A stretch of DNA of 63,970 bases, the filler included, from Octopus bimaculoides (taxonomy: Eukaryota): the NCBI RefSeq assembly GCF_001194135.2. It is 4 parts of 4 records of this genome, joined end to end, with 100 filler letters (N's around TTAATTAATTAA, not from the genome) between each part and the next. Parts side by side here need not be neighbours in the genome. Positions count along the whole stretch, not along the records: positions 51,701 to 58,189 come from NW_026385165.1; 3 more parts are not named here. One strand, 5' to 3'. The translations under genes were made by a program, and so were the position numbers. Shown piece after piece: positions 51,601 to 58,188 of this stretch (position 1 is its first letter; each line of letters opens with the position of its first letter). The notes under the pieces are model-generated. The model saw only the letters and a list, made by a program, of their open reading frames with translations. It was not told the DNA's origin and did not search any database.

Positions 51601-52010
51601 NNNNNNNNNNNNNNNNNNNNNNNNNNNNNNNNNNNNNNNNNNNNTTAATTAATTAANNNNNNNNNNNNNNNNNNNNNNNNNNNNNNNNNNNNNNNNNNNN
51701 TATATATATATATATATATGTAGGTATACACACACACACACACATATATGTATAGATATATGTATGTATTCTTTCATTGGATTTAACGATCCAGTTTGTA
51801 TTCTTCCTAATTACTGTGTGTCAAAGGAAATACTACAATCCCCGATGACATATAGACTTACTTGTATTTAACAAATTGAAGTTGACTTGAAAGGATAGAG
51901 ATTAAAGAGATTGCGTGAAAAACATTCACTAGTTATCCAAGTTGAAATAATGACAGGGGAAAATCATTCAATGAGAGCCCTCCGCATGAAAAATTTACAG
52001 TAAATTGTCC

Positions 52011-52083
<73 letters not shown>

Positions 52084-52445
52084 CCTACCNNNNNNNNNNN
52101 NNNNNNNNNNNNNNNNNNNNNNNNNNNNNNNNNNNNNNNNNNNNNNNNNNNNNNNNNNNNNNNNNNNNNNNNNNNNNNNNNNNNNNNNNNNNNNNNNNNN
52201 NNNNNNNNNNNNNNNNNNNNNNNNNNNNNNNNNNNNNNNNNNNNNNNNNNNNNNNNNNNNNNNNNNNNNNNNNNNNNNNNNNNNNNNNNNNNNNNNNNNN
52301 NNNNNNNNNNNNNNNNNNNNNNNNNNNNNNNNNNNNNNNNNNNNNNNNNNNNNNNNNNNNNNNNNNNNNNNNNNNNNNNNNNNNNNNNNNNNNNNNNNNN
52401 NNNNNTTCATAACATAATCTTCTAACATAATCATAAGAACAATAA

Positions 52446-52560
<115 letters not shown>

Positions 52561-52922
52561 TCTATGTACATATCTAAACTCATAATAAATATCAAATATA
52601 TATAGAATAATACATATTTTAGCAATAAAAAATCAAAAAAATTATTCAACAATATTACTTAAAAACAAAAGCATAACTTATCTTATCGAAGAATTTCTTT
52701 AAAACGAAAATTTCAAACGTAATACGAAAAACCTAGCGTTTACAAGAAATATATGGCGTGATAATATAGCGTAAACATACGATAAAGAATAAATAGATAG
52801 AATACGTATTTAAACTGTTAAAACGACAAAATGTATTGTGTGACATTTTTCATTGTTCGAGTTTGATGATAGCGGTTTTTCTCTAAATTATATATATATA
52901 TATATATATTACAATATTGAAT

Positions 52923-53390
52923 ACATATACAGGTTACGAGTTTAATTGTTCGTGGGTAGCCTGCGCTTATATGTGTAAGAGAATATATTCTCATCAATGC
53001 ATCTGGTGTAAAAAGCACTTGGAACTTATAGTCAACCGAGATAACTCGCATCAGGCCCCATACAAGAGCGATGGACATGGATGTTTTGTCGTTGTTGTGG
53101 CTATCAGCATCGCGTACCGAAGCGAAGTCCGGTGCAAGCTAAATCGTTCTTTGAGACTATATGCAAAATGGTGCAAGAACCGGGCCTTGTTCGGGTACGT
53201 GGTATTGACAAGTCACAACAATGACGAAACATTGATGTCTGTTGCTCTTGAATGGAACCTCATGCGAGTTATCTCGCATGAATATGACATCCAACTGTTT
53301 TAACGTCAGGCGCATTGTTGAAAACATATTCTTTTACGTCAATAAGCGCAACCTACCCACAAACTAGAAAAACGCATACCTTGTGTATGT
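52923..53390. repeat. Long imperfect inverted repeat (~210-bp arms, 45-nt loop)
   Basis: The left arm 52923-53133 aligns with the reverse complement of 53179-53390. The core 53038-53099 / 53214-53275 has 51 of 62 Watson-Crick pairs. Confidence 0.92.
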
Positions 53391-53531
53391 CTGCTCGATA
53401 ATCATTATATCCCCCGAGCTACTTCTAATTCATATTTGAATGAATGTATGTATGTATATATTTAGGTGTTTATATATACGTATGTGTATATAGGTATACA
53501 TATACACACACATATATAAATACTTATATAT

Positions 53532-53570
<39 letters not shown>

Positions 53571-53968
53571 NNNNNNNNNNNNNNNNNNNNNNNNNNNNNN
53601 NNNNNNNNNNNNNNNNNNNNNNNNNNNNNNNNNNNNNNNNNNNNNNNNNNNNNNNNNNNNNNNNNNNNNNNNNNNNNNNNNNNNNNNNNNNNNNNNNNNN
53701 NNNNNNNNNNNNNNNNNNNNNNNNNNNNNNNNNNNNNNNNNNNNNNNNNNNNNNNNNNNNNNNNNNNNNNNNNNNNNNNNNNNNNNNNNNNNNNNNNNNN
53801 NNNNNNNNNNNNNNNNNNNNNNNNNNNNNNNNNNNNNNNNNNNNNNNNNNNNNNNNNNNNNNNNNNNNNNNNNNNNNNNNNNNNNNNNNNNNNNNNNNNN
53901 NNNNNNNNNNNNNNNNNNNNNNNNNNNNNNNNNNNNNNNNNNNNNNNNNNNNNNNNNNNNNNNNNNNN

Positions 53969-54023
<55 letters not shown>

Positions 54024-54630
54024 TGTGTGTGTGTGTACATACATTTATATATAGGTATATACTTAGTAGTTTGAGACAAGTTCAACGACGAACATTGCTG
54101 TGGAAATAATGTCTTATATGAGTAAAAAAATTGTATATATCCCATCATAATTGTTGAACTTCCTTCTTGCATTGAAGAACTGACATATATGTTAGAGCGT
54201 GGGACAAATCACACGGCAGAATTTATACTAGTCCTCTGCCATCATAGTTCAGATCCCATCGAAGTCAAATTTGCCTTTCATATATCTTAAAATTCGATGA
54301 AATAATTTTTTCAGTGCAGTGGTGTAATGAATTGGTATAATTGTTAAAGTGTAAAACGAAATGAAACCTACTATTGGTTCCGAACCATTGATTATTGGGT
54401 TTTTGGGTGGCCGACTTTATCCATGGCCAACTGCAATAAAAGTAGGACAGTAAAATATTTAGACTTCAATTCTCATCGTAATGTATCTTGCTGAATGTTT
54501 GTTGCTGGTGAGAATGCTAAATTTAAGATGTTGCTGTATTGTAGTTCTAATGTTTCAGACCGAGGGCAGCCTCGATACAGCAGACCTTTGTGCAGCTCTA
54601 TTTTGCCCGTTGAGATACTCTGCAGGCGCA

Positions 54631-55611: not shown

Positions 55612-55692
55612 CTTTCNNNNNNNNNNCAAAAAGAAAAGCTCTACATTGTATTTGTCCCATCTTCGTTGAGCCCTGTGTGGCTAATAAAAGAA

Positions 55693-55989: not shown

Positions 55990-56640
55990 CTCATTTTTAT
56001 TCAAGTCTTAAGTAATAATGATAATTCACATAAATGGTTGTGTGAAAGGGCAATTCTTGTTCCAAAAAATGAGACAGTAGCAAGGATTAGTCATGAAATA
56101 ATGAATAAGATTCCAACGTTCATTAAGAAGTATAAATCAGTTGATTTAGTCCTTCATGAAAATAAGGCTGTCCATCACACAACAGAGCTCCTTAATTCTC
56201 TTGAGCCACCTGGATCTTCTCCACATAAGCCTTTTCTGAAGGTAGGAGTCCCAATAATGCTTCTAAGAAATTTAGATCCGCCTAAATTATACAGTGGGAC
56301 AAGGTTGATTGTGAAGACATTATCACCTAACGTGGCAGTAGTTACCATCATCAATGATGGAGAAGAGGTTTTCATTCCAAGAATTCCAATCAAACTAACA
56401 GACATGCCGTTTGAGTTCAGATGAACATAATTCCCAGTGTGACTTTGCTTTTCAATGTCTATTAATTAAGCTCAAGGTTTTATGTTGGTTGCTCCATGGC
56501 TGGTAGTTTGCAGGATTTATTTGTCTATGCTCCAAACTAGAAACCAAAGAATGTTTACCCAGAAGGTCTTATGTAATTTCCTTCAACATATGTGGTAGAA
56601 TTTATCTCCTTTCACAAAAGTGGTAAATTTTGTATTTTCG

Positions 56641-56693
<53 letters not shown>

Positions 56694-56830
56694 TTCAGAC
56701 AGAATTTATTTCCCAGTTAAAGAATAAATTAAATTTAGAATTACGAATTTCTCTACAACATATTTTGCTTTTTCCTTCCGATATGTAAGGAAAAAGTTAA
56801 TTCCCGGGCAGCGCCGGGTGACTTTGCTAG
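55990..56830 (+). mobile_element. Helitron 3' fragment (helicase C-terminus and canonical end)
   Basis: Reads ERAILVPKNE...LKVGVPIMLLRNLDPPKL..GTRLIV...FIPRIP...FPV.LCFSMSIN*AQG. Hairpin cccgg-gcagcg-ccggg (56803-56818), then CTAG (56827-56830) followed by T. Confidence 0.92.
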
Positions 56831-57666
56831 TAAATATATATGTGTATGTGTGTGTGAGTGTATGTATGTATATNNNNNNNNNNNNNNNNNNNNNNNNNNN
56901 NNNNNNNNNNNNNNNNNNNNNNNNNNNNNNNNNNNNNNNNNNNNNNNNNNNNNNNNNNNNNNNNNNNNNNNNNNNNNNNNNNNNNNNNNNNNNNNNNNNN
57001 NNNNNNNNNNNNNNNNNNNNNNNNNNNNNNNNNNNNNNNNNNNNNNNNNNNNNNNNNNNNNNNNNNNNNNNNNNNNNNNNNNNNNNNNNNNNNNNNNNNN
57101 NNNNNNNNNNNNNNNNNNNNNNNNNNNNNNNNNNNNNNNNNNNNNNNNNNNNNNNNNNNNNNNNNNNNNNNNNNNNNNNNNNNNNNNNNNNNNNNNNNNN
57201 NNNNNNNNNNNNNNNNNNNNNNNNNNNNNNNNNNNNNNNNNNNNNNNNNNNNNNNNNNNNNNNNNNNNNNNNNNNNNNNNNNNNNNNNNNNNNNNNNNNN
57301 NNNNNNNNNNNNNNNNNNNNNNNNNNNNNNNNNNNNNNNNNNNNNNNNNNNNNNNNNNNNNNNNNNNNNNNNNNNNNNNNNNNNNNNNNNNNNNNNNNNN
57401 NNNNNNNNNNNNNNNNNNNNNNNNNNNNNNNNNNNNNNNNNNNNNNNNNNNNNNNNNNNNNNNNNNNNNNNNNNNNNNNNNNNNNNNNNNNNNNNNNNNN
57501 NNNNNNNNNNNNNNNNNNNNNNNNNNNNNNNNNNNNNNNNNNNNNNNNNNNNNNNNNNNNNNNNNNNNNNNNNNNNNNNNNNNNNNNNNNNNNNNNNNNN
57601 NNNNNNNNNNNNNNNNNNNNNNNNNNNNNNNNNNNNNNNNNNNNNNNNNNNNNNNNNNNNNNNTAT

Positions 57667-57819
57667 ACAGGTGCTATGTGGTAGGAAGCTTGCTTCCTAA
57701 CCACATGGTTCTGGGTTCAGTCCCACTGCGTGGCATCTTGGGCATGTGTCTTCTACTGTTGCGTCTGACTGCTCAAATCCTTGTGAGTGGGTTTGGTAGG
57801 CGAAAACTGAAAGAAGCTC

Positions 57820-57863
<44 letters not shown>

Positions 57864-58188
57864 TAAATACATAAGTGCTGTGTGGTAAGAAGCTTGCTTT
57901 CCGACCACATGGTTCTGGGTTCTATCCCTCTGCATGGAACCTTGAGCAAGTAAGTGTCTTCTGCTATACCTTTTGGCTGCCCAAAGTAATGTGAGTAGAT
58001 TTGTTAGACGGAAAGTGTATTTGTGTGTCTGTGTTTGTTCCCACTAACACTTGACAACTGATGTTGGTATGCTTACGTCCCTGTAAACACACCGATAGAA
58101 TAACTACTAGACTTACAAAGAATAAGCCCTGAGATCGAATTGTACGACTAAAGGCGGTGCTCCAGCATGGCCACAGTCAAATGACTGA
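57667..58188 (+). mobile_element. Two adjacent SINE family A copies (57667-57822 and 57875-58188)
   Basis: Both start with (g)tgtggta(g/a)gaagcttgctt...ccacatggttctgggttc. Confidence 0.82.

What the first reader, a model, noticed from the sequence alone, without database searches (positions are those of the whole stretch)
52923..53390. 470-bp ancient fold-back with a G-U bias, a candidate hairpin RNA or ADAR substrate
Seen: ~210-bp arms stay collinear with few indels despite roughly 25-30% divergence, around a 45-nt loop, in CpG-containing non-microsatellite DNA with no recognisable TE protein or TSD. By hand alignment about 20 differences give G-U wobbles on the + strand versus about 9 A-C mismatches, whereas neutral decay predicts parity, so this is suggestive only. 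On the minus (GLTP) strand those positions become A-C mismatches, which ADAR favours. The right arm also holds a nested hairpin tcatgcgag-ttat-ctcgcatga. Inference: a structured ncRNA, like endogenous hairpin-RNA siRNA precursors, or an old palindromic MITE.
Basis: partly seen in the sequence, partly recalled or inferred. Interest (0 to 1): 0.7.

Follow-up and report, generated by a model that had tools for sequence, protein, structure and literature searches.

The report
Old decaying fold-back repeat in octopus DNA
The 470-base inverted repeat is real, but it looks like one of the many old, neutrally decaying fold-back repeats in non-coding octopus DNA, and nothing here shows that it is a selected hairpin RNA gene.

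Summary
The fold-back is real. The arms are 52923-53134 and 53180-53390, 75.5% complementary, with about 5 indels and a 45-nt loop. Predicted RNA folding energy is -232 kcal/mol on + (z -22) and -205 on - (z -15).

The feature that made it interesting does not hold. G-U versus A-C is 19 versus 10 (binomial p = 0.14). The 27 kcal/mol difference between the strands falls inside a neutral randomisation (two-sided 0.09).

The differences between the arms look like neutral decay:
- No codon periodicity (19/16/16).
- An ordinary indel-to-substitution ratio (0.10, against 0.02-0.09 in neighbouring junk repeats).
- An excess of transitions at CpG sites (p = 0.03).

There is no Rfam match and no believable protein or Pfam match. 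The host is an Octopus, shown by a Helitron fragment and SINEs in the same piece.

In about 220 kb of Octopus DNA fetched for comparison there were about 12 independent complex fold-backs of 100-1064 nt. That is roughly one per 18 kb, so the class is commonplace. No copy of this particular one was found.

Published work reports the endo-siRNA machinery as lost in molluscs. If transcribed, the element would be a passive ADAR substrate like any inverted repeat. Transcription and orthologue covariation could not be tested.

The parts
52923..53134 (.). Left arm of the fold-back (212 nt)
   Evidence: Aligns with the reverse complement of 53180-53390: 157 matches, 51 mismatches, 7 gapped bases. Self-BLAST E 9e-54.
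53135..53179 (.). Central spacer or loop, about 45 nt, 36% GC
   Evidence: Unpaired or weakly paired in both predicted folds. Composition.
53180..53390 (.). Right arm of the fold-back (211 nt)
53260..53281 (.). Nested perfect palindrome TCATGCGAG-TTAT-CTCGCATGA in the right arm
   Evidence: Read in the sequence. The only perfect 9-bp hairpin in the element; 6 of 500 shuffles contain one.
53032..53053 (.). Degraded mirror copy of the nested palindrome in the left arm (6 of 9 stem pairs left)
   Evidence: Sequence. It includes the longest identical run between the arms, CGAGATAACTCGCAT.
52889..52909 (.). (TA)n microsatellite next to the left end; it blurs the left boundary
   Evidence: Tandem Repeats Finder. 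The local alignment of the arms can be stretched to 52902 and 53410.
53449..53570 (.). TA/TG-rich microsatellite to the right of the element, ending in a 398-N assembly gap
   Evidence: It gives false microRNA-family hits in Rfam.

Best explanation
This is an old fold-back (inverted-repeat) DNA element in non-coding, repeat-rich DNA of an Octopus genome.

Shown: it is an inverted repeat, and its two arms now differ at 24.5% of aligned sites.

Inferred: it began as a much more perfect palindrome. Its source was either a decayed non-autonomous palindromic DNA transposon (MITE-like; my split is about 0.5) or a local inverted duplication made by template switching during replication (about 0.3). 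The arms then diverged independently and neutrally, to about 0.30 substitutions per site between them, or about 0.15 per arm.

Inferred: it has no selected RNA function. If it lies in a transcribed region, either strand would fold into an imperfect duplex of about 210 bp. ADAR would then edit it passively, as happens to inverted or palindromic repeats in general.
For: 1. The pattern of differences between the arms is what neutral decay gives.
- 29 transitions and 22 transversions. G-U against A-C is 19 against 10, p = 0.14.
- The energy difference between the strands lies within the randomisation, two-sided 0.09.
- No codon periodicity: 19/16/16, p = 0.84.
- Gap openings per mismatch: 0.10 for the arms, against 0.018 among SINE copies and 0.086 among Helitron copies of the same genus.
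- 9 of the 29 transitions are CpG to TpG or CpA. The transition rate is 0.26 in CpG columns against 0.11 elsewhere, Fisher p = 0.03. This is the signature of methyl-CpG decay.

2. The divergence between the arms is of the same order as that between copies of the dead repeats nearby. Arm distance is 0.30. SINE copies are about 75-81% identical. Helitron fragments are about 78-83% identical.

3. The base rate is high. Self-BLAST of 220 kb of O. sinensis and O. bimaculoides DNA finds 21 self-palindromic segments. About 12 are independent, complex fold-backs of 100-1064 nt at 79-99.7% identity. A further five belong to one palindrome family linked to a Helitron-like repeat. That is roughly one per 18 kb.

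4. There is no match to any Rfam family on the element. There is no real protein homologue or Pfam domain. The five hits are chance sums over tandem-repeat proteins.

5. Context: the piece consists of microsatellites, assembly gaps, a Helitron Pif1-2B fragment and two SINE copies.
Against: - No second copy was found in 217 kb of Octopus DNA, in JGI metagenome contigs, in GTDB genomes or in IMG/VR. No target-site duplication or defined terminal motif could be recognised. A transposon origin is therefore unproven.
- CpG observed/expected is 1.14 in the element, against 0.67 in the rest of the piece and 0.34-0.44 in the Helitron and SINE copies. The element is therefore not depleted as typical old repeats here are. 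I explain this by a very CpG-rich ancestor, but it remains an oddity.
- The G-U excess runs 2:1 both at CpG sites (6:3) and at other sites (13:7). A real but weak bias cannot be excluded with 29 sites.
- Transcription, editing and conservation in orthologues could not be examined at all.
- The 220 kb sample is biased, because every locus was anchored on a Helitron fragment.
Confidence: 0.8

Rival explanations
1. It is a selected long-hairpin RNA gene, transcribed from the + strand. It resembles Drosophila hpRNA loci or mouse oocyte hairpins, whose duplex is diced into endogenous siRNAs that silence a target.
For: The + strand is predicted to fold 27 kcal/mol better than the - strand. G-U wobbles outnumber A-C mismatches 19 to 10 on +.
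Against: - The bias is not significant (p = 0.14; 0.09).
- The arms are only 75% complementary.
- The arms resemble no gene or protein that could be a target.
- siAGO and DICER2 are reported lost in all Trochozoa, and no endo-siRNA signature was seen in a mollusc small-RNA library (PMC11114477, read).
- Comparable fold-backs occur about once per 18 kb in Octopus DNA.
- The + strand contains T-runs, and no promoter could be assessed.
Confidence: 0.03
2. It is a functionally retained dsRNA element within a transcript. Possible roles are an ADAR-recruiting or ADAR-titrating duplex, or an editing-inducer element that influences editing or splicing of the host pre-mRNA in a cephalopod with very high editing activity.
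For: - The duplex meets the criterion used for hyper-edited dsRNA, at least 65% identity within 2 kb.
- O. bimaculoides has one of the two highest hyper-editing signals among the species studied.
- A palindromic Harbinger repeat is edited on its own in Xenopus.
(All three from PMC5625713, read.)
- The - strand would present 19 A-C mismatches. ADAR edits A-C mismatches well (established knowledge).
Against: - Any transcribed inverted repeat has these properties, so they do not indicate selection.
- The differences between the arms look neutral.
- No host gene, exon or strand could be established in the piece.
- PMC5625713 reports that hyper-editing sits overwhelmingly in repeats and in weakly expressed loci.
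Confidence: 0.07
3. It is a relic of a coding sequence duplicated in inverted orientation, such as two head-to-head fragments of a transposase or host exon. This idea comes from the fully open 70-codon frames in the left arm and the 128-aa ORF at 52917-53303.
For: The left arm is open over all 70 codons in + frame 0 and in - frame 2. An ORF of 128 aa spans the left arm, the loop and part of the right arm.
Against: - Differences between the arms show no third-position excess: 19/16/16.
- No homologue shares even three 5-residue words among 5.8 billion clusters.
- No Pfam domain.
- The profile-free search of 1.8 billion representatives gave only spurious repeat-protein hits.
- The right arm has stops in every frame.
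Confidence: 0.03
4. It is an assembly artefact, such as a chimeric snap-back join.
For: The scaffold is a short-read draft with four N gaps in 6.5 kb.
Against: Artefactual palindromes are near-perfect. These arms differ at 24.5% of sites and carry indels. The element lies in continuous sequence, 820 nt and 180 nt from the nearest gaps.
Confidence: 0.01

Closest known systems
Palindromic MITEs (for example the palindromic Harbinger-derived repeat of Xenopus tropicalis described in PMC5625713)
   Same: A short (under 800 bp) non-coding element that is an inverted repeat over almost its whole length. It would fold into a tight hairpin if transcribed, and is therefore a stand-alone ADAR substrate.
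   Different: No target-site duplication, no recognisable terminal motif and no other copy were found in the DNA I could search. The arms are far more diverged (75%) than in the heavily edited Xenopus example.
Inverted pairs of repeats (the IR-Alu type) that form most hyper-edited dsRNA in animals
   Same: An intramolecular duplex of a few hundred base pairs with mismatches. Identity is above the 65% criterion used for putative dsRNA (PMC5625713).
   Different: Here the two arms are not copies of a recognisable dispersed family. The local SINE copies at 57671-58017 are in direct, not inverted, orientation.
Drosophila hpRNA loci (precursors of endo-siRNAs)
   Same: A long inverted repeat with a short loop, predicted to form a single long hairpin.
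   Different: By established knowledge, hpRNA arms are highly complementary, derive from their target genes, and need Dicer-2 and AGO2. Here the arms are 75% complementary and match no gene. The pathway proteins are reported absent in molluscs (PMC11114477).
Foldback (FB) elements of Drosophila
   Same: Long inverted terminal repeats that make up most of the element.
   Different: By established knowledge, FB arms are built from tandem subrepeats. Tandem Repeats Finder finds no tandem array inside 52923-53390.

Membership tests
MITE (miniature inverted-repeat transposable element) | Small size with no coding capacity | tested here: met
   468 nt. The ORFs have no homologue, no Pfam domain and no codon periodicity.
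MITE (miniature inverted-repeat transposable element) | Terminal inverted repeats with defined ends | tested here: inconclusive
   The whole element is an inverted repeat. Its ends fade into a (TA)n tract: they are 52923 and 53390 by BLAST, and can be stretched to 52902 and 53410.
MITE (miniature inverted-repeat transposable element) | Target-site duplication flanking the element | tested here: inconclusive
   No matching direct repeat is visible at either candidate boundary (flanks printed). Boundaries are uncertain at this age, and a TA duplication could hide in the (TA)n tract.
MITE (miniature inverted-repeat transposable element) | Many dispersed copies in the genome | tested here: inconclusive
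   0 hits in 217 kb of Octopus DNA, where the SINE gives 29 and the Helitron fragment 14. This excludes only a very high copy number, roughly more than a few tens of thousands of copies. The whole genome was not searchable.
hpRNA / endo-siRNA precursor | A long inverted repeat folding into one hairpin | tested here: met
   Minimum free energy -232 kcal/mol, z -22.
hpRNA / endo-siRNA precursor | Arms homologous to a target gene | tested here: not met
   No real protein-level match for the 128-aa + strand reading frame (left arm, loop and part of the right arm) or for the longest minus-strand ORF of each arm. A nucleotide search of Octopus transcripts was not possible.
hpRNA / endo-siRNA precursor | Dicer-dependent siRNAs of about 21 nt loaded into an siRNA-class Argonaute | not testable with these tools
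   No small-RNA data. The literature reports siAGO and DICER2 lost in Trochozoa (PMC11114477).
ADAR hyper-editing substrate | A reverse-oriented partner with at least 65% identity within 2 kb | tested here: met
   75.5% identity, with 45 nt between the arms. Criterion taken from PMC5625713.
ADAR hyper-editing substrate | Transcribed, with clusters of A-to-G mismatches in RNA reads | not testable with these tools
Curated RNA families (Rfam 15, including microRNA precursors) | A covariance-model match at or near the gathering score | tested here: not met
   No hit inside 52923-53390 at E up to 1. The only hits are microsatellite look-alikes of mir-297, mir-466 and similar families in the flanks, far below their gathering scores.
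Drosophila-type Foldback element | Arms composed of tandem subrepeats | tested here: not met
   No tandem array within the arms.

The most novel reading that the evidence does not exclude
The weak 2:1 excess of G-U over A-C on the + strand is real and reflects selection to keep a + strand hairpin paired. This would make it a cephalopod long-hairpin RNA. It might be processed by the single remaining Dicer, or it might act as a dedicated ADAR-binding duplex, in a lineage that lacks the canonical endo-siRNA proteins.
Probability: 0.04. Interest if true: 0.55.

Novelty: new member of a known kind. Interest (0 to 1): 0.12.

Why it matters
As it stands it matters little. It is one more decayed fold-back in a genome that holds on the order of one per 10-20 kb in the sample examined.

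The useful results are negative:
- A hand-counted G-U excess of 20 to 9 in a single hairpin is within neutral expectation.
- The high density of fold-backs fits the published link between dsRNA-forming potential and the very high hyper-editing signal of Octopus.

If RNA data later showed discrete processing of such hairpins in an animal without siAGO and DICER2, that would be of real interest. Nothing here points that way.

Tried and rejected
- **Protein origin of the arms.** The word-indexed search found nothing and Pfam found nothing. The exhaustive representative search gave five hits. All are artefacts of weak matches of about 24 bits summed over tandem Listeria-Bacteroides or ankyrin repeats.
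- **Coding constraint between the arms.** Rejected, because mismatch phase is 19/16/16.
- **Orthologous locus through the neighbouring Helitron fragment.** The best O. sinensis proteins (77-78%) proved to be paralogous copies. Similarity stops at the repeat edges, 56004-56847.
- **Six-frame Pfam scan of the whole piece by DNA reference.** I replaced it with scans of individual ORFs, which found nothing except Pif1_2B.
- **Exact-pattern scans.** Scans for the best-conserved arm segments in JGI metagenome contigs, GTDB genomes and IMG/VR gave zero hits. These collections are not expected to hold Octopus DNA, so this says little.
- **Bacterial promoter and terminator scan and tRNA scan.** Neither is informative for a eukaryote.
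- **Parvovirus-like terminal hairpin.** Considered because of the nested palindrome. Rejected because the small palindromes sit about 100 nt from the symmetry axis, not at it, and no viral sequence is nearby.

Full report
**What is there**

Reading 52700-53650 and the repeat finder show an inverted repeat. It appears there as two collinear blocks, 53012-53102 with 53211-53301 at 78%, and 52941-53014 with 53298-53371 at 74%. A global alignment of 52923-53134 against the reverse complement of 53180-53390 gives 157 matches, 51 mismatches and 7 gapped bases in about five events. That is 75.5% identity around a spacer of about 45 nt.

Self-BLAST of the whole piece with low-complexity masking returns only two repeats. 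One is this fold-back on itself, at exactly 52923-53390 (E 9e-54). The other is a pair of direct SINE copies at 57671-58017.

As RNA, the + strand is predicted to fold to -232.3 kcal/mol (shuffles -119 ± 5, z -22). The - strand folds to -205.4 (z -15). The nested hairpin is at 53260-53281, with a perfect 9-bp stem. Only 6 of 500 shuffles contain one, so it was probably a feature of the ancestral arm. Its mirror copy at 53032-53053 keeps 6 of 9 pairs.

**The G-U bias**

I classified each arm difference by what it forms on the + strand. There are 19 G-U, 10 A-C (which are G-U on the - strand) and 22 transversion mismatches. The binomial test of 19 against 10 gives p = 0.14. Four other gap-penalty settings give 18-20 against 10-11, with p between 0.15 and 0.18.

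I then randomised the orientation of the 29 transition sites 300 times and refolded both strands. The strand difference has sd 16 kcal/mol. The observed -26.9 is reached or exceeded in absolute value in 9% of trials.

Even if it were real, the bias equals an excess of C>T and A>G over G>A and T>C on the + strand. A strand-asymmetric mutation process linked to transcription or replication would produce that without any selection on RNA. This last point is inference from established knowledge.

**Do the arms decay like neutral DNA?**

- Mismatches fall on the three phases of the open reading frame as 19/16/16 (p = 0.84). There is no coding constraint, although the left arm is open for 70 codons on both strands and a 128-aa ORF spans 52917-53303.
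- Gap openings per mismatch are 0.10 for the arms. Among SINE copies the figure is 0.018, and among Helitron-fragment copies in Octopus DNA it is 0.086. 'Few indels' is ordinary.
- Nine of the 29 transitions are CpG facing TpG or CpA. Columns that carry a CpG in either arm have a transition rate of 0.26, against 0.11 elsewhere (Fisher p = 0.03). This is the usual mark of methyl-CpG deamination in unconstrained DNA.
- The distance between the arms is 0.30 substitutions per site. That is of the same order as the divergence among the dead repeats nearby. SINE copies are about 75-81% identical and Helitron fragments about 78-83%.

**What it is not**

Rfam 15 at E up to 1 has no hit on the element. 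The listed mir-297, mir-466 and mir-5014 hits lie on the flanking TA/TG microsatellites at less than half their gathering scores.

The translated arms have no homologue in the word-indexed search and no Pfam domain. The exhaustive search of 1.8 billion representatives returned five proteins. Each is a bacterial or ankyrin tandem-repeat protein in which one 24-bit chance match is summed 8-9 times. There are no tRNA genes in the piece and no tandem subrepeats inside the arms.

**Where it is**

The ORF at 55990-56421 carries a Pif1 2B domain. Its best relatives are uncharacterised proteins of Octopus sinensis and O. bimaculoides at 70-78% identity. The host is therefore an Octopus, and the fragment is part of a dispersed Helitron-like repeat at 56004-56847. 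The rest of the piece is microsatellites, four assembly gaps and two SINE copies. Among the listed ORFs of at least 35 aa, nothing resembles an exon. I could not establish a host gene or a transcribed strand.

**Copy number and base rate**

I fetched nine Octopus loci through the Helitron proteins. Together they hold 217 kb of non-N sequence. BLASTN with word size 7 finds the SINE 29 times and the Helitron fragment 14 times. It finds the fold-back and its upstream flank 0 times. This excludes only a very abundant family.

The same 220 kb scanned against itself holds 42 inverted pairs of at least 100 nt within 2 kb. Of these, 21 are self-palindromic segments. After setting aside microsatellite-like segments and a five-copy palindrome family that sits 750-1000 nt upstream of the Helitron fragment, about a dozen independent, sequence-complex fold-backs remain. 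They are 100-1064 nt long and 79-99.7% identical. That is about one per 18 kb. The sample is biased towards Helitron neighbourhoods, but the class is clearly commonplace in this genus.

**Literature**

Porath et al. 2017 (PMC5625713) report the following:
- Hyper-editing tracks the genomic potential to form long dsRNA.
- O. bimaculoides and Xenopus have the highest signals.
- A palindromic Harbinger repeat in Xenopus is edited without needing a partner.
- Such loci are mostly repeats with weak expression.

Formaggioni et al. 2024 (PMC11114477) conclude that siAGO and DICER2 were lost in Trochozoa, which include molluscs. They found no endo-siRNA signature in an oyster small-RNA library.

**Conclusion**

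The interpretation as a selected hairpin RNA is unsupported. The most likely account is an ancient fold-back repeat, of MITE-like or local inverted-duplication origin, that is decaying neutrally. At most it is a passive ADAR substrate when it is transcribed.

One oddity remains. The element keeps CpG at observed/expected 1.14, and its AT-rich upstream flank at 2.69, while the rest of the piece is at 0.67. Counting shared and arm-specific CpGs suggests a very CpG-rich ancestor. I have no tested explanation for this.

Transcription, editing, small RNAs and orthologue covariation could not be examined with the tools available. These are the decisive tests.

Noticed in passing
window 55990-56421 (+); repeat extends over 56004-56847: A fragment of a Helitron-type Pif1 helicase (Pfam Pif1_2B_dom, E 1.4e-10). 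It lies inside an ORF that begins in a microsatellite. It is 70-78% identical to many 'uncharacterized protein' models of O. sinensis and O. bimaculoides. The DNA repeat recurs 14 times in 217 kb of Octopus DNA at about 78-83% identity.
   Followed up: partly
window 57664-57810 and 57868-58017: Two direct, adjacent copies of a short interspersed repeat, about 75-81% identical and separated by an (AT)n tract. The unit gives 29 hits in 217 kb of Octopus DNA. ARAGORN finds no tRNA in them.
   Followed up: partly
window 52565-52888: The unique flank just upstream of the fold-back is very AT-rich (23.5% GC) yet has 12 CpGs, an observed/expected ratio of 2.69. Many sit in A/T-flanked ACG or CGT motifs. 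It has no copy in the sampled Octopus DNA. This is unexplained.
   Followed up: partly
window 52923-53390 compared with the rest of the piece: The fold-back has 42.5% GC and CpG observed/expected 1.14. The rest of the piece has 32.7% GC and 0.67, and the Helitron and SINE copies have 0.34-0.44. The shared and arm-specific CpG counts (5 shared, 7 left only, 6 right only) suggest an unusually CpG-rich ancestor.
   Followed up: partly
L001 9129-9285, L002 8994-9387, L005 9060-9281, L007 9020-9241, L009 8941-9155: A family of fold-backs of about 200 nt lies 750-1000 nt upstream of the Pif1 fragment in five O. sinensis copies of the Helitron-like repeat. Members are 70-83% identical to each other. 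The window's copy of the repeat lacks this part.
   Followed up: no
L007 14753-15063 and L005 19484-19767: Near-perfect fold-backs in O. sinensis: 311 nt at 99.7% and 284 nt at 98% self-complementarity, both sequence-complex. They look like young palindromic elements and would make much better dsRNA than the one under study.
   Followed up: no
window 51701-51772 and 53444-53541: TA/TG/CA microsatellites give hits to the Rfam microRNA families mir-297, mir-466, mir-5014, mir-3688 and mir-1277 on both strands, with E as low as 1e-5 but at less than half the gathering score. These are low-complexity false positives.
   Followed up: yes
window 52917-53303 (+) and the left arm on both strands: A 128-aa ORF runs through the left arm, the loop and part of the right arm. 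The left arm is free of stops for 70 codons in one frame on each strand. There is no homologue and no codon periodicity, so I take this as chance in a 44% GC stretch.
   Followed up: yes
window 52090-52405, 53571-53968, 55617-55626, 56874-57663: Four runs of N (316, 398, 10 and 790 bases), each next to a microsatellite. This is typical of a short-read draft scaffold. The repeat finder's top 'inverted repeats' I1-I3 (53487-54053) are artefacts of one N run.
   Followed up: yes
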